Positions 3,506-40,027 of a stretch of DNA of 64,000 nt are shown in pieces (position 1 is the first letter of the stretch; every line of letters begins with the position of its first letter). A program made the translations under genes and the position numbers. Below the pieces are notes generated by a model. The model did no database searches. It was not told the DNA's origin and worked only from the letters and a program-made list of their open reading frames with translations. The DNA lies in the IMG/VR virus record IMGVR_UViG_3300032236_001859, positions 1-64,000 of that record; one strand, given 5' to 3'.

Positions 3506-3521
3506 TTTACTCGTAGTCAAG
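3506..3521 (-). promoter_or_regulatory. conserved promoter/operator motif, copy 1
   Basis: Plus strand TTTACTC-GT-AGTCAAG; minus strand contains TTGACT (-35-like). Confidence 0.7.
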
Positions 3522-4149
3522 GCCGTAGGGGTGTCGTCGCTGTTTTAGCCGCTGCCATGGCATCGCGGAGTTCGGCTTGGCTCCACATCGCTGCTTTACT
3601 CTCACCCTTGTATGCCAATGCCATCTTGGACTTCAAGAGTAGATCGTTTAGCGATTCTCCATCTTTGTCATAGAAGACAACCAGAGCACGACCATACTTA
3701 TCCAGTGACTTCGACTCGCAGATCACGGCGCGTTTCAACCAGGCCTCGACGACATCCCTTACCGCGAGACCAACTGCCTTCTGGGGTCCGGTGACCTCAG
3801 GGGTGTCGAGGCCATCGAGGCGGTAACACACCTTACGTGAGATCTGGAATCCGAGGTCGAGATTAACCCAACCCGAATCACCGTCATGGACGTCGATTAT
3901 GGAAAGCACGGGATATACGAAGGGTTTCATACCTTGAGAGTATCGCGGTTTCTGGGCGGCGTCCACATACAGGGGGCACTGGGGTACCGTGGGTTCTTCA
4001 GCTGCAATTCTCTCACGTGCAGGCCAGCTCCGCTGATAGGGGTCGAGGCAGAAGACGAGGAACAAGATGAACACGATTCCGAGCAAGAAAACCAAAGCGA
4101 AGATCCGCAGGATGCCTCCTGAGAAGAGACCAGCGAAATAGTGCATCAT
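3517..4149 (-). CDS. thermonuclease (SNase family) with N-terminal transmembrane segment
   Basis: VHDGDS, RLDGLDTPE, DKYGRAL, LNDLLLKSKMALAY motifs; hydrophobic ILRIFALVFLLGIVFILFLVF. Confidence 0.88.
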   Translation of the reverse strand: MMHYFAGLFSGGILRIFALVFLLGIVFILFLVFCLDPYQRSWPARERIAAEEPTVPQCPLYVDAAQKPRYSQGMKPFVYPVLSIIDVHDGDSGWVNLDLGFQISRKVCYRLDGLDTPEVTGPQKAVGLAVRDVVEAWLKRAVICESKSLDKYGRALVVFYDKDGESLNDLLLKSKMALAYKGESKAAMWSQAELRDAMAAAKTATTPLRP

Positions 4150-4721
4150 CGTTGGACTCCCCTGGCGACCTGGTATTGATAGGTGTGCCTGGGCAGTAGT
4201 TCGGAACCCGCCTTAACCGAGGCTGCAATGATTTCATCCTGAGTAGCCCGTGTGGACAACGCGAGATCTCGGAATGCCATGAGGGTGGCTCCCTTACGCA
4301 GCGTGTCATCCCCGAGCATGCCGACGTAGTCACCGAAGACTGCGGCCAACGCATTGATGACCCCCTGACGTGGTGCCGCCCACTCGAACGTAGGGAATGC
4401 AGCTGCGATGGGGCCGTCTGAATCAAACCTGACATACGTGAAGCCCATGTACCATGCTTTATGGAGAATAAAATCGAATGCCGTACTAAAGCCGAAGCCA
4501 CGGATATTTGGGATCTCGTTCTCGGGTCCAAACGCGCAGTAGATCCAGTATCCCCCATTGGTGTCCTCCAACATGAGGATGGGATCATCGGGATCCCTGA
4601 GCCCATCATGAATGGATTCCAGGATGTCATGATCGAGGTGGGTGAGGTGTGCTGTTGAAAGCACGGCGACCTTCATGGTCTCCGGGAATAGTGAAGGTGT
4701 TATCGATCCTACAGCGTCCAT
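4146..4721 (-). CDS. hypothetical protein with DUF5983-like domain
   Basis: LSTAHL and VRFDSDGP...FPTFEW motifs; GGAG RBS before ATG 4721. Confidence 0.65.
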   Translation of the reverse strand: MDAVGSITPSLFPETMKVAVLSTAHLTHLDHDILESIHDGLRDPDDPILMLEDTNGGYWIYCAFGPENEIPNIRGFGFSTAFDFILHKAWYMGFTYVRFDSDGPIAAAFPTFEWAAPRQGVINALAAVFGDYVGMLGDDTLRKGATLMAFRDLALSTRATQDEIIAASVKAGSELLPRHTYQYQVARGVQR

Positions 4722-4732
4722 AGTGATTCTCC

Positions 4733-4769
4733 AAAAAGAACGAGGCCACGACATCGCTGCCGTGGCCTC
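4733..4769 (-). terminator. intrinsic terminator
   Basis: Minus strand GAGGCCACGGCA-GCGA-TGTCGTGGCCTC (12 bp, one G-U, GNRA loop) followed by GTTCTTTTT. Confidence 0.8.
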
Positions 4770-4791
4770 TTGGGTTCATAAAATCAGTGGT

Positions 4792-5646
4792 CTACTTGCG
4801 ACCGTGGCCTTTGCCATGCTTGGGTGCTGGCTTCTCGACCTCAACAGCCTTGGGGGCTTCCACTACGGGGGTGTCATCGTGGACCACGATGACGGGATCC
4901 GCTTTGTCTCCAGCGTCGAGACTGTCGGGTTCCTCAGTGCTCGCCGCAGTGGTCACAGGAGTCTCATCCGCAGGGGCAGCGACATGTGCGGAATCCAGGG
5001 TGTTACCGAGGACATCATTGAAACCACCTTGGCGCGCCAAGACAATCTCCGGGGCCGCTGAGGCAACCGCACCGGCTTGATCCAGGATCGCACGCTCAGC
5101 GGTGAGATCACGGGTGATCGCGGCCTCAGCGGTGAACACGGGTTTGTCACCCATGGTCTTCGCATAACGCCGGGCCAGCTTGTCACGGTTGCTTTGCCAC
5201 CGCTTGACCTGGTCGCCATTGATACGGGAATCCAAGAGAGCCTGGTACCAATCGACGTCACCGGATTCCTCGAGGAGGTTGATGTCATCCATGGGTTTTC
5301 CATCGTACATCGCCTTGAGAAGGGCCTGCACGAGTTCGCCGGCTTCAGTGGCGATGCCAACAATGGCGTGGAAGACTTGGGGATCCACGGGGAATGGCTT
5401 GGGAGCCGGGAAAGCCCCGGCGACCATGGTAACCGGGAACGGCTTACCATATACCGCAGTTTTCTTGACGTGGTCGAGGACCTGGGATGCCCGAAGGAAA
5501 TCCTCAAGAGATTTCTTGAGAACCCCGCGATGCAGGCGATCCTCGATGTCGATTGCGGAGTCAGGGCATGCCGTTGACAACGCGGCTTCAGAATAGGCCT
5601 CAGGAGTCGTGATGACGACTTGGCCGTTGAGTGGATGCTTGGTCAT
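4792..5646 (-). CDS. mazG: MazG-like nucleotide pyrophosphohydrolase with long charged C-terminal tail
   Basis: GIATEAGEL...LLEESGDVDWY...NRDKLARRY (ExxE...ExxD metal-binding pattern). Confidence 0.85.
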   Translation of the reverse strand: MTKHPLNGQVVITTPEAYSEAALSTACPDSAIDIEDRLHRGVLKKSLEDFLRASQVLDHVKKTAVYGKPFPVTMVAGAFPAPKPFPVDPQVFHAIVGIATEAGELVQALLKAMYDGKPMDDINLLEESGDVDWYQALLDSRINGDQVKRWQSNRDKLARRYAKTMGDKPVFTAEAAITRDLTAERAILDQAGAVASAAPEIVLARQGGFNDVLGNTLDSAHVAAPADETPVTTAASTEEPDSLDAGDKADPVIVVHDDTPVVEAPKAVEVEKPAPKHGKGHGRK

Positions 5647-5987
5647 GCTACGACCTCCAACTTGGGTTTACCGGGGTTGGTTTCGGGGCCACAGCACTCA
5701 CATGGACCCTTGCAGCCCTGAGAGCACTTCGCGGTGTGGTAGTCAGCGTTGAGACGCGCAATGGCGATCTTGCTCCAGGTGTTCGTGATCAGGTAAGTGA
5801 TGAGCACTGAACCCGAGGTAACCACCAGGATGGGGTCAGTGAGGACCCCCTTGGCGAACCAGACCACGGCGAGGAAGCCGAGGACGAGTAAGAACCGTGA
5901 GGACGTCATCAACGTGGAGTCCTTCACAATTGGTTTCGTGGCATCGACGACTTGAGATCGCGAGATCTCGAATCCGAGGATATTCAT
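5643..5987 (-). CDS. putative holin (2 transmembrane helices, Cys-rich C-tail)
   Basis: SSRFLLVLGFLAVVWFA and ILVVTSGSVLITYLI; adjacent to spanin-like locus; holin role is inferred. Confidence 0.6.
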   Translation of the reverse strand: MNILGFEISRSQVVDATKPIVKDSTLMTSSRFLLVLGFLAVVWFAKGVLTDPILVVTSGSVLITYLITNTWSKIAIARLNADYHTAKCSQGCKGPCECCGPETNPGKPKLEVVA

Positions 5988-6448
5988 AGCGGCCCTTTCT
6001 TAGAACCTGGCTTGAACGGAGAGCCCAGCAACGATACCAGGCTGACGAGAACTATCACCGCCGTAAGGAAGAGTGTACCAGCAGCCCAAGCCGAAGCAGT
6101 CCAGGGGTTCCGGAAAGTAATCCCGGGGCGCATACACGCTGGCGCCGACGCCGAAGCGGTCATTGGTGAGCACGAGGTCTGGAGATAGTGTGCCGAAGAA
6201 GAAGCGGACAGGGCTGGCGCGGAGGCCGACTTCGAGCTTTTGATCGGCAAGGGACATTCCAGCGATAGCACCGAAGTCCCAGGCGTATTCGCCGAGGTAA
6301 GTGTCGGGCCGGTAGCTGACCTTGAAGGGGAAGTTGGGATCGTTGGCTTGTTTGGGGTCCTCGTAGAGCACGCCACGGTTATCAGTGACAAACATACCAA
6401 GGACATCACCAGTAGACTTTTCACGGAGGAAAAGAGTTCCCGTACCAT
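5984..6448 (-). CDS. overprinted lipoprotein with C-terminal transmembrane helix (unimolecular/o-spanin-like, 154 aa)
   Basis: +1 frame within 6000..6599; leader MVRELFSSVKSLLVMSLVCLSLITVA|C; C-terminal TLFLTAVIVLVSLVSLLG then KPGSKK; stop in ATGA overlap with holin start; host-frame T3 spikes under both hydrophobic segments. Confidence 0.6.
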   Translation of the reverse strand: MVRELFSSVKSLLVMSLVCLSLITVACSTRTPNKPTIPTSPSRSATGPTLTSANTPGTSVLSLECPLPIKSSKSASAPALSASSSAHYLQTSCSPMTASASAPACMRPGITFRNPWTASAWAAGTLFLTAVIVLVSLVSLLGSPFKPGSKKGPL

Positions 6449-6599
6449 CGGTGTCTTTCTTCCAGTTCCAGTGCATTGATGTCGCATCATACTTGATTAC
6501 ATCCTTCCCTGCTATCGAGCTCCCGGGTTGCGTGGTCAGCGATGAATAAATCACCCAGCCCACGAATGCAATGATCGCAAAACCGAAGATCTGGTTCAT
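6000..6599 (-). CDS. N-terminally membrane-anchored protein with beta-strand C-terminal half ending in Phe (i-spanin-like or OMP-like, 199 aa)
   Basis: GAGGG RBS; IFGFAIIAFVGWVIY anchor; alternating strands; C-terminus AGLSVQARF resembles a beta-barrel signal. Confidence 0.75.
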   Translation of the reverse strand: MNQIFGFAIIAFVGWVIYSSLTTQPGSSIAGKDVIKYDATSMHWNWKKDTDGTGTLFLREKSTGDVLGMFVTDNRGVLYEDPKQANDPNFPFKVSYRPDTYLGEYAWDFGAIAGMSLADQKLEVGLRASPVRFFFGTLSPDLVLTNDRFGVGASVYAPRDYFPEPLDCFGLGCWYTLPYGGDSSRQPGIVAGLSVQARF

Positions 6600-6704
6600 A
6601 GTGTTCACCCTCTTCCGGTCGCGCGTATCCAAGGCTTGGCTAACCCAGAAGTCACGCTATGGTGAGCGCGAATGCTATGAGGTCTGCCTCAAAAGGAAAG
6701 CCGC

Positions 6705-7679: not shown

Positions 7680-7682
7680 GTC

Positions 7683-9158
7683 TCAGGCCTGCGCCGGAGG
7701 TGTCACTGGGGCCTCAGCGGCGGCCTCTGGGGCCGCCACGGGCTCCTCGGCCTTCTTGGGTGCATTAGCGGCCTCAATGGTCACCAGGAACTCTCGTGTC
7801 TTCTCCAGGGCCTCATCGAGGAGGATATCGCCGACAAGGGGCTCCAATAGGGCTTGAAGCTGGGGTAGCGAGTTCTGGGCCTGACTGATCACGATGTTGC
7901 CCCAGTAGATGAGTTCGTGTTGCTCGGTGAGAGCAGCGGCCCCACCTGCGGCCTTGATGTCGGCGAGGACTTCGTCGATGACGGGGATGATTTCCCCAGC
8001 CATCTCGGATTCTGCGACAGGGATGGCCTCAGTCGTAATGGTGTGAACAACCTTCAGGGAGTTCACGGCACGGCGAGCCTCGTCTTCATCGAGTTGCATG
8101 TGGATCCAGGCGACAAGTTCAGCCATAGCGTTCTGCAGGCTTCCCTTGCGGTCCAGCATAGCCTTGAACTCAGGACTGGCCTCAGCGGCCTTGTTGACCT
8201 TGGCGTCGAGACGAGGTGATTTCAGGCAGGCGAGTTGGAGGGTGTTGTGGAGTCTCTCATTGTACTCGGCATGTGCAGCGGCCTCACGGATCTCGTCTTC
8301 CGATGGCAACTTGACCTCGGCGTAGAGCTTCGTGGCCAGTGCTGCGGCGATATCGAAAGTGATCCCACTCTTGATGCGGTCGAGAAGCCAGGCATCGAAT
8401 GATGGCTTGGGTTCCTCGACCTCCGACATCGCCAGGGCGTAGTCGGTCTGGAAGTTGGCTTTGTCCAGCGAGGCACACCGCTTCTTGGCTTCCGCCTCGA
8501 TTTCGGCTTCCTTCTTCTGCATGGCCTCATGCACCATGGATTTCACGGTATCGGCGTCATAGGCCCGTGTGGGGTCCAAGGTGAATGAGGGATCCCGCTT
8601 CCAGTTTGGACCCGGCTTCCAGGTGAGGTCTTCGATGAAGGCCTCCCGGATCCCGGCGAGCATCTTGCGCTCCTTGTCAGTCAACGAGACCTTGTCGTTT
8701 TCACCGACCTCGTCCACAGGGGAATCATGGACTTCAATCTTGAAGGGTGACTCGACTGCGATGGCACCCCCACCAGTTGAAGCCGCCACGGGAACGAACA
8801 AGAAGACATGCTTCCAGATCAGCTTGGCTGTTGGCAGCATGTAGAACTCGGTTCCAGTATCCCACCCAATGGGCTGATACGGGGAGTCCCCGTACTTCAC
8901 GAAGACAACCTTGTTCTGGATGATCGCCCCGGTCTGGCACCAGAACGTGCCGGCGCGGAGACGGGAGATCAAGATGCGCCCCTGCATACCGTGGCGAATG
9001 ATGCGAGTCAGGAACCGATAGAGATGAACCCGATTCAACTTGCCCTCAGCGATTTCCTCGGGCGTCTTGGTATCTGGCTTCAGGGCGTCGAAGACTTGCT
9101 TGCGCAGGGCTTCCTCGCGTGCCATGGATTCATCTTGGTTGACCTGGATCTCGCCCAT
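7683..9158 (-). CDS. hypothetical protein (491 aa), helical and acidic
   Basis: Long ORF, GAGGAG RBS, GC3-rich codons. Confidence 0.8.
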   Translation of the reverse strand: MGEIQVNQDESMAREEALRKQVFDALKPDTKTPEEIAEGKLNRVHLYRFLTRIIRHGMQGRILISRLRAGTFWCQTGAIIQNKVVFVKYGDSPYQPIGWDTGTEFYMLPTAKLIWKHVFLFVPVAASTGGGAIAVESPFKIEVHDSPVDEVGENDKVSLTDKERKMLAGIREAFIEDLTWKPGPNWKRDPSFTLDPTRAYDADTVKSMVHEAMQKKEAEIEAEAKKRCASLDKANFQTDYALAMSEVEEPKPSFDAWLLDRIKSGITFDIAAALATKLYAEVKLPSEDEIREAAAHAEYNERLHNTLQLACLKSPRLDAKVNKAAEASPEFKAMLDRKGSLQNAMAELVAWIHMQLDEDEARRAVNSLKVVHTITTEAIPVAESEMAGEIIPVIDEVLADIKAAGGAAALTEQHELIYWGNIVISQAQNSLPQLQALLEPLVGDILLDEALEKTREFLVTIEAANAPKKAEEPVAAPEAAAEAPVTPPAQA

Positions 9159-9198
9159 ATCTCGCTCCTCTGGTGGTGAGCGCCCAGTTTGATTCTGG

Positions 9199-9213
9199 TT
9201 TTCCCTGAGTCAA
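9199..9213 (-). promoter_or_regulatory. variant of the conserved motif
   Basis: TTTTCCC-T-GAGTCAA in intergenic gap; minus strand TTGACT-N16-CAAACT. Confidence 0.45.
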
Positions 9214-9220
9214 CCCCGCC

Positions 9221-10605: not shown

Positions 10606-10840
10606 TGGGGACCTCCACTCGCGTTATCGTGATCCCCCACTTGGCCTGAAACGCGGCCTCGTCGCGGACCTGTTGATCCAGGTTCGCCAGGGTCTTCTTT
10701 TCGGCATCAATCCTGGCGAGCACTCTTGCACGCCGAATCGTGACGTCGTTGTCTGATAACCCCAGGTAGGTCCTGGGGCTTAGATTGCAGTTGTTTGCCC
10801 AGATAGTCGACATAGGCACTACACATATTTTTGCAGACAT
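10586..10840 (-). CDS. hypothetical protein (84 aa)
   Basis: GGAG upstream of ATG; overlaps the upstream ORF by 134 bp. Confidence 0.6.
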   Translation of the reverse strand: MSAKICVVPMSTIWANNCNLSPRTYLGLSDNDVTIRRARVLARIDAEKKTLANLDQQVRDEAAFQAKWGITITRVEVPNDRKKI

Positions 10841-13382: not shown

Positions 13383-13458
13383 ATTTCCTCCATGAACAAA
13401 AAGAAACGTCGGCGTGCAGAGCACACCGACGTCATGGGACACCTAATGAAAGATGGCC

Positions 13459-13800
13459 TCAAAACTTTGTGGTCGCCGGAGCACCGACCTGAGGGGGTTC
13501 CTCCTCGACTTTGTCCTTGACATCGGAATCCGAACCTGCCTCAGGCACCTTAATGCCGGCGGCAGCAAAGGAAGTCGACAGGGCATCCACCAGGGGTTCT
13601 TCCTTGGTGAACGTGGCGCCATGCTTGATGTGGAGAACAACTTGCTTGCCACCATCGAGGGTGAGCAGCAGGGTGTTGGCGTTGATGAACGAGAAGCGAC
13701 CCTGCAACAATGCGGTGCGCGCGGATTCCGTGCAGACCTCGATGTTGTTGGGGGTGCGGCCACCGGGGTTCAGTGTACCGGTACGCAAGAAGTTTACCAT
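13459..13800 (-). CDS. hypothetical protein
   Basis: GGAG RBS before ATG 13800; downstream of motif copy 2. Confidence 0.7.
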   Translation of the reverse strand: MVNFLRTGTLNPGGRTPNNIEVCTESARTALLQGRFSFINANTLLLTLDGGKQVVLHIKHGATFTKEEPLVDALSTSFAAAGIKVPEAGSDSDVKDKVEEEPPQVGAPATTKF

Positions 13801-13857
13801 GTGGACTCCAGAGTGTTGTGCTGACTTGCAGCGGGTGATGACAGGATTCTGTAGCGG

Positions 13858-13873
13858 TTTACTCTCAGTCAAG
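13858..13873 (-). promoter_or_regulatory. conserved promoter/operator motif, copy 2
   Basis: TTTACTC-TC-AGTCAAG. Confidence 0.7.
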
Positions 13874-13889
13874 TCCCCACGTGGGGACT
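13872..13889. repeat. perfect 18-bp palindrome AGTCCCCACGTGGGGACT
   Basis: Self-complementary; directly abuts motif copy 2 and the ruvA stop. Confidence 0.8.
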
Positions 13890-18650: not shown

Positions 18651-19884
18651 TCTTGTACCCCAATGAGAGTAGGGATATCACGGTGTCCTGAACATGAAAT
18701 GGAACATGCTTCCAGCGCGCGTGCTCTTCGTGCGCAAAGCAATGCGATGCCATGTTTAGCGTGATCTCGACATCTGCTGCCTTGCCGTCATCGCGAATCA
18801 GGTATCCAACGAGTTCACCTGGATTCATGGGTTCCCCGAAGTCATACGACGCCGGGGTTCGTAGGAGGTAGACATTCCGATCGTAATCCGATACCAGGAG
18901 GGTGGCATTTACGGGTTCGAGATCCAGGATCAACGCCTTCTCGAGGTCCTCTCGCGAAGGCTGCCGTTGGGCGTCACCTTTGTCGTCGATCTCGATTTTG
19001 TCGTCGAGTTGCTCGGGGAGGTCATCAGAGAACCGTGTGGATCCAATGAGTAACCGCATGGGCTTCTCAGGGATCCCTGCCCACTCCGATAACGTGCTCA
19101 GGTGGTCCTCGACGAGTTCATCCCAGATCTTGTCCTTGGCCTTGGATTCGGCCTCAGAGAACGCGAGATCATCTAGGATGGGGTAGTTATCCAGGGCGTG
19201 AGATATCTTCAACAGGGTATTCGCACAGTTGAACACTCTGACCTCACCTCCATAAAGATTGGCGATGCAGACACAGACGCCATCATCGAGGTTAGTGAAG
19301 ATGTCGTTGCCTTGGGTACGGAGTTCTTCAAGCGTTTTCACCACGGCGTCGTAGTTGACGCGACCCCCAAGGGATCCCCGCTCCCGGACGAGATCGGGGC
19401 GAAACCGGATCCAGAACCCCGTGTTCTGGATATCCTCGAGTGTATGCCTGAACTCGTGATCCATATTGGTGGGGCCCTGGACCTCATCGCGGTGATCCAG
19501 CGCAACCCTCATCGCGGCGAGATCGCCAATCTTGGTGAGGAACCCGGGGTCGATCTCCGCGAATCCAGGTGGGCATTCGCGGGGGACATAAATAAACTTA
19601 CCCTTCTTGGTGTCGCCGTACTTGGGTGCTGTGGGATCCGGCCAGCCATCAAAGGGTTCGAGACCCTCGGAGATGGCTTCAAGGCTCTCTCGCCAAGCCA
19701 TATCCCGGGCGACCGAGGGTTTGAACTTACCTTCACAGCACGGGCACCCCATGCCCCGGATGAGTTGATCATAGGAATGCCAGGGGAGATCTGAATGTGA
19801 GAAGTGGAGACCCCCAGTGCTATCCCAGGGTTCCCCACACCGGCAGATAATGTCGGCCATATGTGATCCGATCTGTCTCGACAT
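18643..19884 (-). CDS. hypothetical protein with N-terminal Cys cluster (413 aa)
   Basis: CRCGEPWD...GCPCCEG. Confidence 0.8.
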   Translation of the reverse strand: MSRQIGSHMADIICRCGEPWDSTGGLHFSHSDLPWHSYDQLIRGMGCPCCEGKFKPSVARDMAWRESLEAISEGLEPFDGWPDPTAPKYGDTKKGKFIYVPRECPPGFAEIDPGFLTKIGDLAAMRVALDHRDEVQGPTNMDHEFRHTLEDIQNTGFWIRFRPDLVRERGSLGGRVNYDAVVKTLEELRTQGNDIFTNLDDGVCVCIANLYGGEVRVFNCANTLLKISHALDNYPILDDLAFSEAESKAKDKIWDELVEDHLSTLSEWAGIPEKPMRLLIGSTRFSDDLPEQLDDKIEIDDKGDAQRQPSREDLEKALILDLEPVNATLLVSDYDRNVYLLRTPASYDFGEPMNPGELVGYLIRDDGKAADVEITLNMASHCFAHEEHARWKHVPFHVQDTVISLLSLGYKNG

Positions 19885-19893
19885 GGAGACTAT

Positions 19894-23273: not shown

Positions 23274-23576
23274 TTACACCGACTGCACTTTTTGACTCTT
23301 CTTTTCCGTTTTGGCTTTCACCGGGATGGTTAGATCTGGTCGAGTGCATGGTGTGAGCCCAGCTGATAACAATTGCTTTTCCAGGCGAGATGCCTCAGCC
23401 TGGGTTGCGACTACGGCCCGTCGTGCGATTTGCTCGTTGCGTCCTGATGTCCGGACATCTTCTTGAGCTCTGTGCAGGGCCTCGCGTAATTTGCAGAGTT
23501 CGCGCTCTAACTTCTCGATCTCAGCTTTATGCTCGGCTTTGAGAAGCGCGATCTTACGGTCTTGTGCGGTTATCAT
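23274..23576 (-). CDS. coiled-coil hypothetical protein
   Basis: GGAG RBS before ATG 23576; heptad-like sequence. Confidence 0.7.
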   Translation of the reverse strand: MITAQDRKIALLKAEHKAEIEKLERELCKLREALHRAQEDVRTSGRNEQIARRAVVATQAEASRLEKQLLSAGLTPCTRPDLTIPVKAKTEKKSQKVQSV

Positions 23577-23607
23577 ACTGGCTCCAAGGGCGTAGCCTAT
23601 ACCCAAG

Positions 23608-23623
23608 TTTACTCAGCGTCAAG
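23608..23623 (-). promoter_or_regulatory. conserved promoter/operator motif, copy 3
   Basis: TTTACTC-AG-CGTCAAG; minus strand TTGACG-N17-TAGGCT is sigma70-like. Confidence 0.75.
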
Positions 23624-25699
23624 TCACCCGAGGTCCACGCTGAGCTCAGTGGTGAGCCTGGGGCCACTTGAATGCGTAATCGTTATCTTACGCGACTTGG
23701 AGTCAATGCACACCGAAGCAATGCTCTCGCGATCTCTCCGCGAACCCTCGAGTCCGCAGAGTCGCAGGATCTCATGGTATGGCCTCGAGATCTCGGCAAC
23801 ATTGGCAATGCTGGCACGGAACTTCGCAAAGTCCTCCTCAATGGCCTTGGCGGTTTCACCGTCGTCCTCCCCGGAACTCTGGACAATGTGAGTTAATGTG
23901 CATTCAACACTGGAAGTCAACGCGATGACATCATCGAGTTTCCCAAGCCACACGGTATCGCTCACACTCCGGTCATCCCCGTAGTACAAGCTGAACGCGG
24001 GAAGACTAAAGGTCTCCTGACGCACCGCCTTTGACCGGACCTCTGCGAAATCGCTGAAGAGCATCGGGGTGTTTCCGGCATCGCGTAGGGCCTCCAGGCC
24101 GTCATCAAAGTTTTCGTAGACATCAAAGAACAGGATTTCACCCTTGACGCCGTCATCGAGACGAATGAAGGTGTTGGCCCGCATGTGGGAGGTATGTGAA
24201 CCCCAGGGATGCGTGGCGATGTCGGATAGCTTGAGGGGGACATCAATTACCATCAAGGCTGCCTGGGCACGCACTGCATCTACACCATTGAGTGATTTTA
24301 CGGAAACACAGACCCCACTGGGAACCCATGACCCGCTAATCACATCACACCCCGTTGCCGCCCCTGATTCAGGTTTCCATGATGGTACCGACGCTGGGAA
24401 ATTAAATCTCGCCGAGGTGTCCGAGGTATCATCAAGACAGGAATCATCCATGCCAACGATGAGGACCTGGCTATCCAATGTCTTCAAGACAATCATGGAT
24501 GCCAGCTCGGCTACACGTGCGTTGCGGGGTAACAATGTTTTCGTGAGATAAGTGTTATCATAATCACTGGGTACCGGCCAGCTCACCTGTGGAGCCCCGA
24601 TGTAGTGCCGGTAAAAAGCGCGATACACGAGTTCTGGGAACTCCTGGTTCGCGTAGCAACCCGTGTAACAGACATCAGAGACTCGAAGTTTGCCATCCTG
24701 GTAGCACTTCGCTTTCTCCATAAATGACTTCTGCGTATTCCGGATACCAGCCTCGAATTGATTCTGGTATAGGCCCCAAATGAACTCTACTGTCTTTGGA
24801 TCCAGAATCAGTGAGTTGCGATCTGGTAGCTTGGGGGTCACTGGGGCGTTGCCGTGATCGATGGCAATACACCAGTGCATCGTGGAACGCATCTCTGGGG
24901 TAGCGTTAAATTCGATGTCGTCAAACTTGAAGTGCTTGCGAAACTCCTGTGATCGCACATCGACCTGGATACGCTGGCCATGCCAGATGACCCCAAGGAC
25001 ACCCTCTGCACCACTCCACCCTGGGTGGGTGTCCTCCCAGACCTCGTACCCCCGATGCTTGTAATGATTACCCTCGGCGTCGAGCACTCGGCGAAACCTA
25101 TCACGAAAACTGATAACCTTGGCGGGCTCCCCCTGCCCGGGCTGCTTCATGAAGACATCAAGGGAGGCATGATAGAATGCAGTTGCCTCGACAACACGGA
25201 TGACTTCGGATTCCGAGGGGATCCCAATCATCTGGATCTCGGTGCCCTCACACCCCCAATTTGGATCGATCTTTTCGAGGAGGGAATCTCGATACTCGGC
25301 ATCCTTGAAGAACTTCTTGCCCTCGATCTCGAGGATCCCGAATTGCGACGAAATGATGAGGCGATTCGAGAACGCAAGGGCGGCACAGAGCCCCATGCCC
25401 GCGGGATCCTGTTCGCGTTCCACACTGGAGTCCCACCCGGAAACCGCGATGCTCAGGGCGGCACCGACATCTGTGATCCCCTTGCCGTAGTCGCGCACCG
25501 TCAGAGTGGTGAGGCCCTCTCGTGTGGACTCCACGGTGACATCAACACGTGGGCGTACCCCAGTGGTCTCAATAGGCAAACTGGCGCGATAGGCGTTCTG
25601 GAGAACCTCGGTAACCGCGGAACCGAAGTTGCTGAAATATCGTGCAGCCTTGGAGAAAAAGTTCGAGGAGACATGAATCGGAGTCTGAGTCATTGTCAT
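23624..25699 (-). CDS. GHKL (HATPase_c) ATPase-domain protein, MORC/rIIA-like N-terminus
   Basis: EVLQNAYRA (N box), VRDYGKG (G1), DPAGMGLCA (G2). Confidence 0.8.
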   Translation of the reverse strand: MTMTQTPIHVSSNFFSKAARYFSNFGSAVTEVLQNAYRASLPIETTGVRPRVDVTVESTREGLTTLTVRDYGKGITDVGAALSIAVSGWDSSVEREQDPAGMGLCAALAFSNRLIISSQFGILEIEGKKFFKDAEYRDSLLEKIDPNWGCEGTEIQMIGIPSESEVIRVVEATAFYHASLDVFMKQPGQGEPAKVISFRDRFRRVLDAEGNHYKHRGYEVWEDTHPGWSGAEGVLGVIWHGQRIQVDVRSQEFRKHFKFDDIEFNATPEMRSTMHWCIAIDHGNAPVTPKLPDRNSLILDPKTVEFIWGLYQNQFEAGIRNTQKSFMEKAKCYQDGKLRVSDVCYTGCYANQEFPELVYRAFYRHYIGAPQVSWPVPSDYDNTYLTKTLLPRNARVAELASMIVLKTLDSQVLIVGMDDSCLDDTSDTSARFNFPASVPSWKPESGAATGCDVISGSWVPSGVCVSVKSLNGVDAVRAQAALMVIDVPLKLSDIATHPWGSHTSHMRANTFIRLDDGVKGEILFFDVYENFDDGLEALRDAGNTPMLFSDFAEVRSKAVRQETFSLPAFSLYYGDDRSVSDTVWLGKLDDVIALTSSVECTLTHIVQSSGEDDGETAKAIEEDFAKFRASIANVAEISRPYHEILRLCGLEGSRRDRESIASVCIDSKSRKITITHSSGPRLTTELSVDLG

Positions 25700-31422: not shown

Positions 31423-31870
31423 AAAACGACCTCACGGAGGCATGAAACCTGGCCAGGTTGAAAACCGTGAGCACGAAGGGCTGCCCGCCAGGATCCTTGA
31501 CTTCCTTCAAAGATGTTGTGTTGAGAAACCGTAATCCATGCGGGGTAGTCAACACCATGGTGACGCCGTCAAAAACAGAAACACTGTCTGCGGCGATGTT
31601 CTCAGCGGAGTGCTTGGCGACCTCGGAAATAAACGCCATTCTGGCGGCTTCGGGAATACCAGATCTCGACAAAAAAGCGGAGACTACCGAAATAGTCACC
31701 GCTTCGACTTGACCAAGACTGGGGTTCAGCATCCCGATCAGAGATAGCGTGGAACGTATGTAGCCAACACCGTGGGCGTCGATCCCAAAAGATGACGCCA
31801 CGGCTTCGATGACGTCAGACTCAGATCGAACGCGTGAGTTTGATATCTCTCTCGTAGGCGACGACGACAT
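31376..31870 (-). CDS. hypothetical protein, start uncertain
   Basis: Protein-like region 31376-31820; no clear RBS/start next to the upstream stop. Confidence 0.55.
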   Translation of the reverse strand: MSSSPTREISNSRVRSESDVIEAVASSFGIDAHGVGYIRSTLSLIGMLNPSLGQVEAVTISVVSAFLSRSGIPEAARMAFISEVAKHSAENIAADSVSVFDGVTMVLTTPHGLRFLNTTSLKEVKDPGGQPFVLTVFNLARFHASVRSFYDKHEMPGVRGNDQR

Positions 31871-32144
31871 CGACACCATCCTTGTCCTTGACCTTGATTG
31901 GGTAGGTATGACCGTTGTCCATCCCATAATTGGTGATGCCCAGTTCCGCCTTCTTCTCTTCGACATCATTGCGGAAGCCGGGGGAGGACAGATAGGTGAT
32001 CACCCCAGAGATTTCCTTGGGGTCGTTAATAGCCACCCGAGCGATGATGTGCGTTTTGTCCAAACCCTTGGTAGAGGTGAACTCGGCGCCATCACTGGTG
32101 TGAAATGTGACCGGGTACTTTTTGATTCCGAACGCTTGAATCAC
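31821..32144 (-). CDS. hypothetical protein (107 aa)
   Basis: GTG start with AAGGAG RBS. Confidence 0.75.
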   Translation of the reverse strand: MIQAFGIKKYPVTFHTSDGAEFTSTKGLDKTHIIARVAINDPKEISGVITYLSSPGFRNDVEEKKAELGITNYGMDNGHTYPIKVKDKDGVDVVVAYERDIKLTRSI

Positions 32145-32169
32145 GATAGGCTCCTTGCTGGGGTTGACC

Positions 32170-32199
32170 TATAGTGAATCCCGTCGGTGTGGAGTCAAG
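32170..32199 (-). promoter_or_regulatory. possible sigma70-like promoter
   Basis: TTGACT-N16-CACTAT in an intergenic gap; shares AGTCAAGTCCCC with the 13.87-kb site. Confidence 0.4.
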
Positions 32200-32210
32200 T
32201 CCCCGTGGGT

Positions 32211-33857: not shown

Positions 33858-33874
33858 CACGGACATCCTTGCGG

Positions 33875-36843: not shown

Positions 36844-38330
36844 TTCTTACCCTTGGGGGCTGGTTTCTCAGGAAGACTCCAGTCGATGTCGGCTTCCTGA
36901 ACCGTGGGGTACTTGTTGATGCACAGGTAGTTCTGGACAGCCTTCCGGTGCTTGGGTGAGGCTTCAATTCGTTTGCCGAAATCGTGGAGACTCATGACCC
37001 CACGTTTGTCCTTATCGGATTCCTCGAGTTCTTCCGCGGTGCAGAGCTCTTCACATTTCACATACCCAGCTCTGACCTGGGTGAAATACACGGCTTCATC
37101 GAGAACACCGACTTCGTACTTGGACCCCTTCTCGGTGTCGCGGCCATACTTGCAGGTCCACAACATTTCACCGAGAGCACCTTCCCAGTCATAGACCATG
37201 ACCTGTTTCGTACTCCCGTCGGGGAGTCTGGGGAACTGCCAGAGCACATCAACTTTAATCTTGAGCTTGTCGGGGCCCAGAGATGAACAGTTCGAGGTGA
37301 ACACCACAGTTGTTCGGGTAACCGGAGGCCCCTGGAACGGTGCCGCGGGATGAAACGCGAGTTCATCATGGGCATGCTTTTCGAGGCGGAGCCCAAGGGA
37401 GGCCGCGAACTTAGCGAAGTCACCACCGGCTTCCTTGTGTTTATCGGCAAACTTCGCAGAGAAGGAGCCGTCAGAGATTACTGTGCTGAGATGTTGCACG
37501 TAACCCGCGGACATACAGGTACCGCGCATCGAGATCCCACGGAGGAAGCCCCCGATCATATTGGCACGTGTGGCACCCCCATAACCACGCTCCTGGGCAT
37601 GCCCCTCTTTCTCGAGCTCCGCCATGCCGGCCTCGGAGTCCTTACCAGTCAGAGAGTCAACTGCACAGTAGATGGGTACCCGCTTACCCTTGTCCTTGAG
37701 CTCGGGATGGTCGATGACCATCTTTCGAGCCCACTCCAGGGTCTCCACCAAAGCGGTCTGCCAGCCCTCGATAGATGTCACCGGGGTATAGATCAAACGG
37801 CTTCGCCCTGTTTGAATCATGGGGTCAGGATTAACACGTAACAGGATCTCCCGGTCAGGGTGATCCATGTCATCAGGCATCCCGGTTTCGGGGTCACGTG
37901 GTATCGAACTGTTATAGCTGCAGAAGTTACCCTGACTATCCGTATAGGGGTCTTCAGGGCTCAAGAACCGCCACCACGTCATGGCCTCGAACATCGTGTA
38001 CGAAGACTTCTCTTCGGCATCGATGTAGCGTGCGCACCCATTGGCCATCGCATACCACACGCAAACCATGATCTGGAATGTCGACTTCATGGACTTCGGC
38101 ATTCCACTAACCGCGTACCACCTCTGCAGAGGTAACACGCTGGTGTTGCCAGCGAGGTACTGCATGGCCAGCGCAGGGATCTCGATTCCATAGGTGTGCT
38201 GGGCGTGGTCGCCGAGGAGATACCCCTTGTTTGAAGTAGCGCGATCCTTGGCGGAACCCAAAAGGCTCTGAACCAAAGAATGCACCACGGTTTCTTGATT
38301 GGAAACGACTTCTTCTTTTTTCTTTGCCAT
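36840..38330 (-). CDS. recA: RecA/UvsX-like recombinase
   Basis: Walker A GMPKSMKST, YIDAEE, Walker B AVDSL, GGDFAKFAASLGLRL; position between SSB-like gene and exonucleases. Confidence 0.8.
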   Translation of the reverse strand: MAKKKEEVVSNQETVVHSLVQSLLGSAKDRATSNKGYLLGDHAQHTYGIEIPALAMQYLAGNTSVLPLQRWYAVSGMPKSMKSTFQIMVCVWYAMANGCARYIDAEEKSSYTMFEAMTWWRFLSPEDPYTDSQGNFCSYNSSIPRDPETGMPDDMDHPDREILLRVNPDPMIQTGRSRLIYTPVTSIEGWQTALVETLEWARKMVIDHPELKDKGKRVPIYCAVDSLTGKDSEAGMAELEKEGHAQERGYGGATRANMIGGFLRGISMRGTCMSAGYVQHLSTVISDGSFSAKFADKHKEAGGDFAKFAASLGLRLEKHAHDELAFHPAAPFQGPPVTRTTVVFTSNCSSLGPDKLKIKVDVLWQFPRLPDGSTKQVMVYDWEGALGEMLWTCKYGRDTEKGSKYEVGVLDEAVYFTQVRAGYVKCEELCTAEELEESDKDKRGVMSLHDFGKRIEASPKHRKAVQNYLCINKYPTVQEADIDWSLPEKPAPKGKK

Positions 38331-38347
38331 CGATAGTCTCCAGGTTG

Positions 38348-38380
38348 GAGACAGGGAGGGGATGACCCCCTCCCTGTCTC
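38348..38380. other. perfect 14-bp hairpin without U-tract between the SSB-like gene and recA
   Basis: GAGACAGGGAGGGG-ATGAC-CCCCTCCCTGTCTC. Confidence 0.75.
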
Positions 38381-38401
38381 GGTTTCAGGTGGTTATGTGA
38401 T

Positions 38402-39928
38402 TCAGGCCTTCGGGGGCTGCTGCTGGAGTGTCGCGCTGAACTGGTTAGCCAGGGCGTTGGCACTCGGAGGAATCACACTGGCTGCTGGAACCGTGGGGGC
38501 CGGAGCCGCTGGGGCCGCTGGAGCCGGGGCTGCTGGGGCCTGAGGAGCCGGCCACGGGTTCGCAGGGGCTGCAGGAGACGCTGGAGCCTGGGGAGCTGGC
38601 CAGGGGTTCGCTGGAACCGCTGGGGCTGCAGGAGCCGCTGGGTTACCCCATGGCGCCTGAGGAGCCGGGGCCATGGGGGCCTGGGGCGCCGCTGGGGCTG
38701 GCCAGGGGTTCGCTGGAGCCGCGGGGGCTGCAGGAGCCGCTGAACCAGGCCAGGCGCCCGCAGGGGCTGCGGGAGCCGCTGGGGCCTGGTTGTGCCAGGG
38801 ACTCGCGGGTTGCGCCGGAGCTGGTGCTGCGGGAATCGCCTGATTACCCCAGGGTGAAGCCGGCGCAGGGGCCATGGGATACCCTGGAGGTGGTTGCTGT
38901 GCCGGTGGATACCCTGGGGCCTGTGGGTACCCCGCTGGGGCCTGGGGAGGATATCCCATTGGGGCCTGGGGTGCCATCTGCGGCATCGGGATGCCCAGAC
39001 GCGCCATGTCGTCTCCGAAGGCTTCGGCGACGAGCACGGGTCCAAACGCGGCGACCATCTTCTTGATGTGGTCATCACGGGTGAACCGCAGGAAGCAGTC
39101 TTCCCAGGGATGCCAGGCCTGGCGGCAGAAATCATCGGGGATCGGTGATGGCGTATAGTTGAGGAATGCAGGGGTGATGCCACCGGGGAAGAAGAGCTGT
39201 GGCATCCCAGGGAACTGCATGATGTTCCCGTTGAAGTCACAGAGCCCGCACTGCATCGAGGCCTGCTCCTGACCTGGCAAAGTCTTCGGAGGCAGACCCC
39301 AGAACTTGACATAGCAGCCACCAGAGGGGCTGAAGATGTCGATACCAGCCAGGTACGCTGCCTTCGCGATCTTATCGAAGGCGGTGAACGCGGATTGCTT
39401 GAGGATTACAGCCGTGTTGGCCTGCATCTGGGCAAGCGCGGCATTGTTGGCCATGATGACGACGCCCTGGGCGAAGTGCATGCTGCCCGGGTTATCCAGT
39501 GCACCGGGGCGATCCCCTTGCCGTTTGGCCAGCGCGGCCTGGAGAATAGGCACGAGCATTGGGTTCAGCTGGTTCTTCTTGAGACGACCTTTGAGCTGGA
39601 TGAAGAGACCGGACCAGGGCAGGTTGGGTTCATCGGTGATGAGATCGACACGCCCATCCATGCCCAGGGGGCGGACGAGGCCGGTGAACAGTGTTCCAGT
39701 ACCCGCGGCAACAGCAACACGTTCAAACCAGAAGTTCGAGTAATCGATGCCTTGGGCGTCGACGACCCGTGCCATGGGATACGGGGTGCCATCAGGGGCG
39801 ATCTCGGGCAGGAATCTCACGATGGAGACACCATTGGTCTTCGGTGTGAAGGCTTGAAGCGTGCCAGGCTTGAAGCAGTGTTGATAAAAGTCGCCTCTTT
39901 CAGACGAATTGTAGGACGGAGCGCGCAT
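38402..39928 (-). CDS. single-stranded DNA-binding-like protein with long Pro/Ala-rich tail
   Basis: N-terminal IVRFLPE motif as in gp32-type SSBs; lies between Pol and RecA; SSB role is inferred. Confidence 0.6.
   Translation of the reverse strand: MRAPSYNSSERGDFYQHCFKPGTLQAFTPKTNGVSIVRFLPEIAPDGTPYPMARVVDAQGIDYSNFWFERVAVAAGTGTLFTGLVRPLGMDGRVDLITDEPNLPWSGLFIQLKGRLKKNQLNPMLVPILQAALAKRQGDRPGALDNPGSMHFAQGVVIMANNAALAQMQANTAVILKQSAFTAFDKIAKAAYLAGIDIFSPSGGCYVKFWGLPPKTLPGQEQASMQCGLCDFNGNIMQFPGMPQLFFPGGITPAFLNYTPSPIPDDFCRQAWHPWEDCFLRFTRDDHIKKMVAAFGPVLVAEAFGDDMARLGIPMPQMAPQAPMGYPPQAPAGYPQAPGYPPAQQPPPGYPMAPAPASPWGNQAIPAAPAPAQPASPWHNQAPAAPAAPAGAWPGSAAPAAPAAPANPWPAPAAPQAPMAPAPQAPWGNPAAPAAPAVPANPWPAPQAPASPAAPANPWPAPQAPAAPAPAAPAAPAPTVPAASVIPPSANALANQFSATLQQQPPKA
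38420..38990 (-). repeat. coding low-complexity repeats: 7x PAxPW-like and 4x GYP
   Basis: PASPWGN, PASPWHN, PAGAWPG, PANPWPA (x3), PQAPWGN; repeated GGGGCTG/GGAGCC units in DNA. Confidence 0.85.
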
Positions 39929-39962
39929 GTTTTTCCTTTGTTGTCGGGGTTGATTTGACGCT

Positions 39963-39992
39963 TCCCCTGCCGAATTGCGCTACGGCAGGGGA
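39963..39992. other. 10-bp hairpin in the 5' leader of the SSB-like gene
   Basis: TCCCCTGCCG/CGGCAGGGGA, no U-tract; just downstream of motif copy 4. Confidence 0.65.
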
Positions 39993-40011
39993 CCTCCAGA
40001 ACGTAACTGGG

Positions 40012-40027
40012 TTTACTCACAGTCAAG
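40012..40027 (-). promoter_or_regulatory. conserved promoter/operator motif, copy 4
   Basis: TTTACTC-AC-AGTCAAG; minus strand TTGACT-N15-TACGTT. Confidence 0.7.

What the first reader, a model, noticed from the sequence alone, without database searches (positions are those of the whole stretch)
3506..40027. Recurring 16-bp pseudo-palindromic promoter/operator motif TTTACTC-NN-(A/C)GTCAAG
Seen: four copies (3506, 13858, 23608, 40012) share 13 invariant bases; all sit at gene boundaries in one orientation, with TTGAC on the coding strand upstream of a gene with an RBS. Chance expectation for 13 fixed bases is about 0.002 per 64 kb (both strands, equal base frequencies). Weaker variants lie at 9199, 32193 and 63404. 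The motif is a near-dyad (TT[T/G]ACTC-N-GAGT[A/C]AA) overlapping a -35-like hexamer, with inconsistent -10 spacing (15-17). Inference: a regulon for a dimeric regulator or non-standard sigma factor covering SSB/RecA and the operon containing the endolysin.
Basis: partly seen in the sequence, partly recalled or inferred. Interest (0 to 1): 0.62.

Follow-up and report, generated by a model that had tools for sequence, protein, structure and literature searches.

The report
Jumbo-phage promoter/operator motif, early-gene arc
The repeated 16-base motif is real: it is the core of about 14 conserved promoter/operator sites that head the non-structural operons of an uncultivated 216-kb phage that carries its own sigma factor and RNA polymerase. 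This is an ordinary kind of element in a poorly known phage group.

Summary
There are four exact copies in the window, with none expected by chance, and all lie on the coding (-) strand as CTTGAC-K-NN-GAGTAAA(CC).

The window is the first 64 kb of a 216,043-bp phage genome. Genome-wide, a 22-nt matrix finds 16 places, 14 of them intergenic. It is the only strong intergenic motif found de novo. Thirteen of the 14 intergenic sites lie in the non-structural arc (160 kb through the record ends to 63 kb). The structural arc holds only one weak, oppositely oriented match at its edge.

Two relatives at 75-85% DNA identity keep the sites they cover as conserved islands. Five relatives with 43-54% identical RNA polymerase lack the motif.

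The motif is a dyad, TTKACT-N3-AGTMAA, whose left half is a -35-like CTTGAC. An nAnnnT hexamer lies 15-17 nt downstream at 10 of 11 sites.

Best reading: these are sigma-70-family-type promoters fused to an operator for a dimeric regulator. Candidate readers lie outside the window: an 81-aa XRE protein, and the phage's own sigma factor with its RNA polymerase. It is not resolved whether the host or the phage polymerase reads the sites, or where transcription starts, because no RNA data exist.

The parts
3503..3524 (-). Motif site (GGCCTTGACTACGAGTAAAGGG). It has a -10-like GATCAT 16 nt after TTGACT, at 3498-3493. It heads the gene at 3083-3472.
   Evidence: Exact match. Matrix score 19.3 bits. 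It is the only site that also passes the generic sigma-70 scan. It is a conserved island against G001. Contigs from three metagenomes list no differences between 3470 and 3552.
9196..9217 (-). Motif site, a weaker variant (GGGGTTGACTCAGGGAAAACCA). CAAACT lies 16 nt after TTGACT. It heads the gene at 7683-9158.
   Evidence: 25.1 bits. Conserved in G001. nAnnnT test.
13855..13876 (-). Motif site (GGACTTGACTGAGAGTAAACCG). It is preceded by the hairpin GTCCCCACGTGGGGAC, and CAGAAT lies 15 nt after TTGACT. It heads the gene at 13459-13800.
   Evidence: Exact match. 30.2 bits. Conserved in G001.
23605..23626 (-). Motif site (TGACTTGACGCTGAGTAAACTT). GGTATAGGCT lies at the -10 position. It heads the gene at 23274-23576 and overlaps the stop of the GHKL-ATPase gene at 23624-25699.
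   Evidence: Exact match. 23.6 bits. Identical in G001. Pfam result for the upstream gene.
32161..32182 (-). Palindromic variant (GGGATTCACTATAGGTCAACCC) lying over the -10 position of the separate -35-like element at 32194-32200. It heads the gene at 31821-32144.
   Evidence: 19.9 bits. Conserved in G001 while the spacer between the two elements changes.
32194..32200 (-). Orphan -35-like ACTTGAC, 14 nt upstream of the palindrome at 32161-32182.
   Evidence: ACTTGAC occurs 11 times on the coding strand, 8 of them in or at the edge of intergenic DNA. Kept as CTTGACT in G001.
40009..40030 (-). Motif site (CGGCTTGACTGTGAGTAAACCC) overlapping the stop of DNA polymerase A (40023-43091). TACGTT lies 15 nt after TTGACT, and a strong 5'-UTR hairpin follows. 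It heads the gene at 38402-39928.
   Evidence: Exact match. 30.1 bits. Identical in G001. PolA identified by Pfam. Hairpin z = -2.9.
63401..63422 (-). Motif site, a weaker variant (ATGGTTGACTCATGGTAATCCG), in the divergent region between the + strand large terminase gene (63397-65265) and the - strand gene at 63207-63341.
   Evidence: 21.7 bits. Conserved in G001. Terminase homology to Arash gp1.

Best explanation
The motif is the core of a family of about 14 promoter/operator sites. They head the operons of the non-structural (early/middle: replication, recombination and many unknown genes) arc of a 216-kb phage.

Shown here:
- The element is real, intergenic and oriented with the genes.
- It is under purifying selection.
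- It is all but confined to one 120-kb arc. The structural-gene arc holds only one weak, oppositely oriented match at its edge.

Inferred mechanism:
- Each site is a sigma-70-family-type promoter. CTTGAC serves as the -35 element. A weak (c/t)AnnnT hexamer 15-17 nt downstream serves as the -10 element.
- The -35 element is the left half of a 15-19 bp dyad, TTKACT-N3-AGTMAA(CC). A dimeric helix-turn-helix regulator binds this dyad and switches the whole set of operons together.
- At most sites the dyad covers the -35 element. At three sites it sits where a -10 would lie downstream of a separate -35-like hexamer (CTTGAC at 32161 and 192875; a weaker GTGACC, read by eye, at 178420). That is the classic position for repression.
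- The best candidate regulator is the genome's only XRE/HTH_3 protein (81 aa, 177369-177614). Its own operon is headed by one of the sites.
- The polymerase is either the host holoenzyme or the phage's own one. The phage holoenzyme would be the beta-beta'N fusion at 145031-150886, beta'C at 140137-142041 and the sigma at 88546-89190. I lean slightly to the phage's own, because its relative Arash packages these proteins in virions.
For: - Occurrence: four exact copies against 0 expected, and a fifth exact copy at 182694.
- De novo discovery: the motif is the top intergenic motif, and after masking it no second strong motif appears.
- Placement: 16 places score at least 17 bits, and 14 are intergenic where 8.5% of the genome is intergenic (p about 1e-13). 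Shuffled genomes give 0.3 hits.
- Orientation: on the coding strand, CTTGAC is intergenic 12 times against 3 for the other strand, and GTAAACC 9 times against 1.
- Conservation: G001 (75-85% nt identity) keeps all 13 sites it covers as islands, while flanks and the central N positions change. G007 keeps 4 sites. Metagenome contigs list no difference between 3470 and 3552.
- -10-like element: nAnnnT lies 15-17 nt after TTGACN at 10 of 11 sites, against a 13-16% background. At 161564 the hexamer changes from GAGACT to TAGCCT in G001 but keeps the A and the T.
- Dyad symmetry: 0 of 5000 permutations reached the observed score.
- Distribution: only one weak, oppositely oriented match (66087, 17.2 bits, at a gene edge) lies in the 64-160 kb arc. 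That arc holds the capsid, portal, RNA polymerase and sigma genes.
- Candidate readers: the sigma-70 family status of 88546-89190 rests. The single HTH_3 protein rests. It is 91% conserved in G001 and absent from G002 and G006, which also lack the motif.
- Precedent: in restriction-modification controller systems a GACT-N3-AGTC operator half-box coincides with a -35 hexamer (PMC2175313).
- Arash virions contain beta, beta' and sigma (PMC10585845).
Against: - No transcription start site is known, and no RNA run holds this phage.
- The spacers of 15-16 nt are short for sigma-70. Only one site passes a generic sigma-70 scan, and such matches are not enriched in the window (9 found, 9.0 expected).
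- The nAnnnT signal coincides with AT-rich loops of hairpins that begin at the motif's end at 8 of 14 sites (by eye, from the folds). One of these hairpins is kept by a compensatory change. That fits a start site at the motif's end better than one downstream of the hexamer.
- By eye, the recognition helix of the phage sigma (AVSQR) differs from sigma-70's RERIRQ. It is conserved in G002 and G006, which lack the motif. This argues against that sigma reading TTGAC.
- The XRE protein is not specifically a controller-protein orthologue. Controller proteins are only weak hits (E 0.2-0.7).
- No binding was tested.
Confidence: 0.55

Rival explanations
1. The whole 20-bp block is a single-block promoter of the phage's own sigma-dependent RNA polymerase, with no separate regulator. 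Transcription would start at or a few bases after the motif's 3' end. GTAAACC would play the part of the -10-like GGTATAAG of phage Arash. The hairpin that follows would be the 5' stem-loop of the mRNA.
For: - The phage encodes a beta-beta'N fusion, beta'C and a sigma-70-family protein, homologous to the virion proteins of Arash (PMC10585845).
- Related phages each have their own recurring, gene-oriented intergenic motif without a -35 element. Arash has GGTATAAgtaa..TGTAA, 30 copies, 18-33 nt before start codons. G006 has GTTACTATAG.
- The motif is specific to one lineage, as promoters of phage polymerases usually are.
- Hairpins begin within 2 nt of the motif's end at 8 of 14 sites (by eye, from the folds; mean z -1.2). 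One is kept by a compensatory change.
Against: - The dyad symmetry is unexplained.
- A -35-like TTGAC only 5 nt from the putative -10 does not fit sigma-70-family geometry.
- Orphan CTTGAC elements are conserved 14-16 nt upstream of two palindromic sites.
- The sigma recognition helix is conserved in relatives that lack the motif.
- nAnnnT is enriched at the standard -10 distance.
Confidence: 0.25
2. The motif is only an operator for a dimeric phage repressor or activator and contributes nothing to polymerase recognition. The resemblance of its left half to a -35 hexamer is a coincidence.
For: There is strong dyad symmetry. The core resembles the GACT-N3-AGTC C-box. There is a single XRE protein whose operon starts at a site. 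Three sites lie over a -10 position rather than over a -35.
Against: The two halves are consistently different, and the difference is oriented with transcription: CTTGAC lies upstream and GTAAACC downstream at 10 of 14 sites. A homodimer site would not require that. nAnnnT lies at a fixed distance. CTTGAC also occurs alone at promoter-like positions.
Confidence: 0.1
3. The copies are junction repeats of mobile or recombining gene cassettes, like the promoter/stem-loop cassettes of T4-type phages, rather than elements selected for regulation.
For: G001 and the contigs of three metagenomes carry an extra 430-490 bp, one small ORF, immediately upstream of site 3506. In the contigs it is bounded by a repeated 17-22 nt that includes the CTTGACT half.
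Against: Only one of 14 sites shows such an indel. The other sites lie inside long collinear blocks. The position-specific conservation, the orientation and the fixed distance to start codons all point to regulatory function. Cassette shuffling at promoters would in any case be secondary to promoter function.
Confidence: 0.04

Closest known systems
C-boxes of restriction-modification controller (C) proteins, such as C.PvuII and C.AhdI
   Same: The dyad core is GACT/TACT-N3-AGTA/AGTC. On the + strand the four window copies read TACT-N3-AGTC, the same half-box pattern as native PvuII box 1. As there, one half-box coincides with a TTGAC-type -35 hexamer. The presumed binder would be a roughly 80-aa XRE-family dimer (PMC2175313).
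   Different: Each site has a single box, not two boxes 4 nt apart with a conserved GT. There are about 14 sites heading many operons instead of one autoregulated operon. No restriction-modification genes were seen. The candidate protein's recognition helix reads SDSY, not HRTY or DR(T/S)Y, and C proteins are only weak hits (E 0.2-0.7).
Bacterial sigma-70-type promoters, in particular the CTTGAC-N17-CTATAT consensus reported for rhizobia (recalled from memory, not checked here)
   Same: There is a CTTGAC -35 element and a downstream hexamer with A at position 2 and T at position 6.
   Different: The spacer is 15-17 nt, mostly 15-16. The -10 is weak. A block of 8 conserved bases (AGTAAACC) lies inside the spacer. 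Only one site passes a generic scan.
T4 middle promoters (a MotA box replacing the -35 element) and other phage promoter classes switched by a phage-encoded DNA-binding factor (from established knowledge)
   Same: A phage-specific conserved box centred near -30 is combined with a weak -10 element. It marks one temporal class of genes.
   Different: The box here is a dyad and keeps a canonical -35 sequence. No MotA or AsiA homologue was looked for or seen.
The recurring promoter-like motif of Salmonella phage Arash (GGTATAAgtaa..TGTAA), found here
   Same: The phage group is the same: a beta-beta'N fusion, beta'C and a sigma. The motif is gene-oriented and intergenic and occurs as tens of copies, almost all before the - strand genes rather than the + strand structural modules.
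   Different: The sequence and architecture differ. Arash has a -10-like core only, with no -35 element and no dyad. The G000 motif is absent from Arash.

Membership tests
sigma-70-family bipartite promoter | -35 hexamer close to TTGACA | tested here: met
   TTGAC is present at 10 of 14 intergenic sites. The rest have TTTAC, TTCAC or ATTAC. Two further orphan ACTTGAC elements exist.
sigma-70-family bipartite promoter | -10 hexamer (A at position 2, T at position 6) 16-18 nt downstream | tested here: inconclusive
   nAnnnT is present at 10 of 11 sites, but at 15-17 nt. Only one site passes the generic scan. The signal overlaps hairpin loops.
sigma-70-family bipartite promoter | Transcription start 6-8 nt downstream of the -10 hexamer | not testable with these tools
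   No RNA run holds the phage.
C-protein / C-box operator | GACT-N3-AGTC inverted repeat | tested here: met
   Every strong site has one perfect and one near-perfect half (GACT..AGTA or TACT..AGTC). The consensus comes from PMC2175313.
C-protein / C-box operator | Two boxes separated by a 4-nt spacer with a conserved GT | tested here: not met
   Each site has a single box. At 192875 a second degenerate box lies 6 nt away.
C-protein / C-box operator | A small XRE protein with recognition helix HRTY or DR(T/S)Y, encoded downstream of its own box next to restriction-modification genes | tested here: not met
   The 81-aa HTH_3 protein at 177369-177614 lies in an operon headed by site 178420. Its helix reads SDSY. 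C proteins score only E 0.2-0.7. No restriction-modification genes were noticed.
sigma-70 protein family (gene at 88546-89190) | Regions 2-4 alignable to solved sigma factors | tested here: met
   The profile of four phage homologues hits SigA, RpoS, RpoD and FliA, with E down to 4.5e-15 over regions 2 to 4. There are sub-threshold Pfam and NCBIfam hits to r3, r4, RpoS and FliA. It is 28% identical to Arash gp10.
Single-block promoter of a phage-encoded RNA polymerase | About 20 contiguous conserved bases, lineage-specific, with the start at the 3' end | tested here: inconclusive
   The block is contiguous and lineage-specific. The start is unknown. Hairpins at the motif's end are compatible with this kind of promoter.

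The most novel reading that the evidence does not exclude
The motif is the first promoter consensus for a so far unstudied class of phage transcription machinery. That machinery is a virion-delivered, bacterial-type RNA polymerase (a fused beta-beta'N plus beta'C) that uses its own sigma-70-family factor. Its early promoters have merged with a controller-protein-like dyad operator, so that one small XRE dimer times a 120-kb set of operons.
Probability: 0.2. Interest if true: 0.7.

Novelty: new member of a known kind. Interest (0 to 1): 0.42.

Why it matters
Recurring promoter/operator motifs at operon starts are routine in phages, so the element as such is ordinary. Its context gives it some value.

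The phage belongs to a group (Salmonella phage Arash, Vibrio phages D181, D148 and D69, and several 170-200 kb metagenomic genomes) that encodes both a bacterial-type multisubunit RNA polymerase and a sigma factor. A survey of 224 jumbo phages did not report this combination (PMC7824862). I found no promoter described for the group.

The motif gives a defined set of about 14 sites, and two candidate readers, on which the transcription strategy of this group could be tested directly. It also gives a way to delimit the early/middle operons of a genome in which most genes have no known family.

Tried and rejected
- GenBank phages hold no close relative. Megablast found nothing, and PolA is at most 24% identical.
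- My first pattern for relatives had one N too many and wrongly suggested that G001 lacks the motif. This was corrected.
- A scan of IMG/VR for ACTTGACNNNNAGTAAACC gave mostly single chance hits. Only two related contigs carried real copies.
- A metagenome scan for one exact 18-mer gave two unrelated chance hits.
- The protein downstream of site 40012 has only one relative besides its own entry in the 5.8-billion-protein set.
- PHROG and Pfam scans of 20 genes next to the sites gave nothing.
- De novo searches for an analogous motif in G002 gave only ribosome-binding-site, stop-codon and tRNA signals. A terminator-plus-TTAGCTA pattern in G006 has too few copies to count.
- No second strong motif, for example a late promoter, was found in G000.
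- ARAGORN found no tRNA genes.
- No RNA run exists, so starts could not be mapped.
Nothing can be concluded from that.
- Sigma-54, ECF and FliA promoter geometries, and an RNA-hairpin reading of the dyad itself, were considered by eye. They were dropped because the spacing or the key bases do not fit.

Full report
**1. The observation**

The pattern TTTACTCNNMGTCAAG has exactly four matches in the window, at 3506, 13858, 23608 and 40012. All are on the + strand. None appeared in 100 dinucleotide-preserving shuffles, and allowing two mismatches adds no further match.

The window is the first 64 kb of a 216,043-bp IMG/VR phage record with direct terminal repeats (G000). It has 57% G+C. My own ORF-based gene calls give 225 genes, 213 of them on the - strand. 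On the coding strand the motif therefore reads CTTGAC-K-NN-GAGTAAA, usually followed by CC. Each copy lies in or at the edge of an intergenic gap, upstream of a start codon with a Shine-Dalgarno sequence. A fifth exact copy lies at 182694.

**2. The full set of sites**

An expectation-maximisation search over 64 upstream regions of the whole genome returned this motif as the best one from many different seeds. After convergence it is a 22-nt matrix, GG(A/G)C-TTGAC-T-NNN-A-GTAAA-CC(C), with about 16 sites. With those sites masked, no second strong motif emerges.

Sixteen places score at least 17 bits. Fourteen are intergenic, although only 8.5% of the genome is intergenic (binomial p about 1e-13). 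Shuffled genomes give 0.3 such hits.

- In the window the sites are at 3503-3524, 9196-9217, 13855-13876, 23605-23626, 32161-32182, 40009-40030 and 63401-63422.
- Outside the window they are at about 161571, 178431, 182701, 192885, 197179, 199073 and 208265. There is also a weak, oppositely oriented match at a gene edge at 66087 and one copy inside a gene at 95979.
At 32193 there is only a -35-like ACTTGACT, and the whole-motif variant lies 14 nt further downstream.

**3. Orientation and symmetry**

The motif is a dyad, TTKACT-N3-AGTMAA, flanked by GG and CC. Its symmetry score is far above that of permuted columns: 0 of 5000 permutations reached it.

It is nevertheless not symmetric in use.

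- At 10 of 14 sites the half with G (CTTGAC) lies upstream and GTAAACC lies downstream with respect to the genes.
- On the coding strand CTTGAC is intergenic 12 times, against 3 on the other strand. For GTAAACC the counts are 9 and 1.
- At three sites (32161, 178420, 192875) the halves are swapped (TTYAC...GTCAACC).
- At two of these three, a separate and conserved CTTGAC lies 14-16 nt upstream. The dyad then sits where a -10 element would be.

**4. Conservation**

IMG/VR holds two close relatives. G001 is a 171.6-kb contig with 75-85% nucleotide identity. G007 is a 72.9-kb contig.

G001 keeps all 13 sites that fall in the region it covers. Where the flanks have diverged (3506, 161564, 199065, 208257) the motif stands out as an island. 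The changes inside it fall on the central N positions: TACG to TGAA at 3506, and GAGA to GACA at 182694. G007 keeps four sites.

Contigs from lake, soil and wetland metagenomes, about 90-94% identical, list no difference between 3470 and 3552. The coding flanks differ every 5-15 bases.

Five more distant relatives lack the motif. They were found through the RNA polymerase (43-54% amino-acid identity) and are complete or nearly complete genomes of 179-201 kb. Their counts do not exceed those of the reversed-pattern control. Phage Arash lacks it too. The motif is therefore specific to one genus-level lineage.

**5. What kind of phage this is**

Pfam finds RNA polymerase beta and beta' N-terminal domains in a single 1951-aa protein interrupted by an intein (145031-150886).

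Homology to Salmonella phage Arash identifies the following genes:

- the large terminase (63397-65265, + strand);
- a sigma-like protein (88546-89190);
- the major capsid protein (129154-130092);
- the beta' C-terminal part (140137-142041);
- the portal protein (158495-160375).

A profile built from the sigma-like protein and three phage homologues hits solved SigA, RpoS, RpoD and FliA structures. E-values go down to 4.5e-15, over regions 2 to 4.

In Arash, beta, beta' and the sigma factor are abundant in purified virions (PMC10585845). A comparative study of 224 jumbo phages found sigma factors only in phages without an RNA polymerase, and no sigma in those with one (PMC7824862). This group is therefore little known.

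The genes of the window itself are replication, recombination and nucleotide-metabolism genes:

- a staphylococcal-type nuclease;
- thymidylate kinase;
- RuvA-like and RuvB proteins;
- a superfamily-1 helicase;
- a GHKL ATPase;
- two exonucleases;
- DNA polymerase A;
- a SNF2-type helicase;
- an SbcC/SMC-like ATPase.

**6. Distribution**

Thirteen of the 14 intergenic sites lie in the arc that runs from 160 kb through the record ends to 63 kb. The 64-160 kb arc holds the structural genes, the polymerase and the sigma gene. It contains 21 of the 67 intergenic gaps of 30 nt or more, yet only the weak, oppositely oriented match at 66087. The motif thus marks one class of operons, the non-structural ones.

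**7. Promoter geometry**

At 10 of 11 gene-oriented sites a hexamer of the form nAnnnT lies 15-17 nt after TTGACN. Examples are CAGGAT, CAGAAT, TACGTT, CACAGT, CATCCT, GAGACT, TAGGCT, GATCAT, CAAACT and CATAAT. The background is 13% in random sequence and 16% after all other TTGAC in the genome (p about 1e-8).

At 161564 the hexamer differs at three positions in G001 but keeps the A and the T. In the three shortest cases the predicted start falls 2-3 nt before the Shine-Dalgarno sequence (reading).

This is the geometry of a sigma-70-family promoter with a strong -35 element, a short spacer and a weak -10 element.

Against it:

- Only one site passes a generic sigma-70 scan, and such matches are not enriched in the window (9 found, 9.0 expected).
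- Short hairpins begin within 2 nt of the motif's end at 8 of 14 sites (by eye, from the folds; mean z -1.2). Their AT-rich loops overlap the hexamers.
- At 182694 the stem CACAGG/CCTGTG becomes CGCAGG/CCTGCG in G007, a compensatory change. A hairpin that contains the -10 element is odd. It would fit better if transcription started at the motif's end.

**8. Who reads it**

Two candidate readers exist, both outside the window.

(a) An 81-aa XRE/HTH_3 protein.
- A Pfam scan of 148 small proteins found only one HTH_3 protein. It is encoded at 177369-177614 (E 1.2e-11).
- It is the second gene of the operon headed by site 178420.
- It is 91% conserved in G001 and has no homologue in G002 or G006, which lack the motif.
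- Proteins of this family usually bind dyads as dimers.
- The core of the motif matches the GACT-N3-AGTC C-box of restriction-modification controller proteins. In that system one half-box coincides with a -35 hexamer (PMC2175313).
- However, each site has a single box, the recognition helix differs, and controller proteins are only weak hits.

(b) The phage sigma with the phage polymerase.
- For it: relatives have their own recurring, gene-oriented motifs. Arash has GGTATAAgtaa..TGTAA, with 30 copies in the 134 kb examined, 18-33 nt before start codons, without a -35 element and with G where sigma-70 needs T. G006 has GTTACTATAG.
- Two G000 sites carry just such TATA cores at the -10 position: GGTATAGG at 23608 and CTATAGG at 32161.
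- Against it: by eye, the recognition helix of region 4.2 (AVSQR) differs from sigma-70's. It is conserved in G002 and G006, which share no motif with G000.

**9. Conclusion**

The element is a genuine, conserved cis-regulatory signal of transcription.

I commit to this reading: these are promoters of sigma-70-family type whose -35 element is built into an operator for a dimeric phage regulator. They head the early/middle operons (confidence 0.55).

The main rival is a single-block promoter of the phage's own polymerase, with the start at the motif's end (0.25). A pure operator (0.1) and cassette-junction repeats (0.04) are less likely. Chance is excluded.

The kind of element and the two kinds of reader it proposed are right. 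The genes it named as regulators have no DNA-binding domain. The SSB and RecA assignments are not borne out.

**10. Limits**

- Gene calls are my own heuristic.
- The close relatives are few (three lineages).
- No RNA data exist.
- No protein-DNA binding could be computed.

Noticed in passing
G000 145031-150886 (outside the window; L010:1031-6886, - strand): A 1951-aa fusion of RNA polymerase beta and the N-terminal part of beta', interrupted by an intein with a LAGLIDADG endonuclease (about residues 592-1008). The beta' C-terminal part is a separate gene at 140137-142041. A second LAGLIDADG-containing protein of 1136 aa lies at 179227-182637.
   Followed up: partly
G000 88546-89190 (outside the window; L007:4546-5190, - strand): A 214-aa sigma-70-family protein sits in the structural-gene arc. 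It is homologous to gp10 of Salmonella phage Arash, which is found in Arash virions. Having a sigma factor together with a multisubunit polymerase was not reported in a survey of 224 jumbo phages.
   Followed up: yes
window 19874-19891; also G000 82257-82274 and 177353-177370: A second palindrome, AGTCTC(G/C)A(C/T)GTCGAGAC(T/A), is intergenic and conserved in G001. It is preceded by an A run on the coding strand, so on the + strand it reads as a hairpin followed by a T run. One copy overlaps the stop codon of the XRE gene. It may be a terminator for antisense transcripts or a second operator.
   Followed up: partly
window 3522-3568 and the corresponding place in G001 (102142-102621): G001 carries an extra 430-490 bp (one small ORF) immediately upstream of motif site 3506, and so do contigs from three lake, soil and wetland metagenomes. 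In the contigs the insert is bounded by a repeated 17-22 nt that includes the CTTGACT half of the motif.
   Followed up: partly
window 39940-39995, 9180-9196 and 13838-13855; G000 182660-182690 and 178385-178420: Short hairpins begin within 2 nt of the motif's 3' end at 8 of 14 sites. At 182694 the stem is kept by a compensatory change in the related contig G007 (CACAGG/CCTGTG to CGCAGG/CCTGCG).
   Followed up: partly
window 63397-64000 (+ strand), continuing to 65265: The large terminase gene is one of the few + strand genes. Motif site 63401-63422 overlaps its first codons, so the site lies in a divergent control region.
   Followed up: no
G000 115240-117550 (outside the window): There are long tandem arrays of 9-nt and 18-nt units (GGTTCCAGT..., CATCATTCGGGGTCATCG...) in a stretch that my gene caller left uncalled. 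It is probably a repetitive, collagen- or Gly/Ser-rich coding region.
   Followed up: no
Salmonella phage Arash OQ632216.1 (L136, L182, L137): GGTATAAgtaa(g/a)(g/a)TGTAA recurs 30 times in the 134 kb examined. 29 copies are on the - strand. The single + strand copy lies just upstream of gp9 and the sigma gene gp10. The copies are almost all intergenic, 18-33 nt before start codons. The published description of Arash mentions no promoters.
   Followed up: partly
G006 = IMGVR_UViG_3300035698_013504 (L167-L176): The intergenic motif (c)GTTACTATAG(A) has about 9 gene-oriented copies. A region at 13.2-14.5 kb holds tandem 36-nt repeats containing GAACCA.
   Followed up: no
window 1536-1564, 4742-4769 and 13405-13433: Strong intrinsic-terminator-like hairpins with T runs lie on the coding strand in intergenic gaps that carry no motif copy. 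Terminator-like sites are enriched in 1-20 kb (25 found, 14.7 expected).
   Followed up: no
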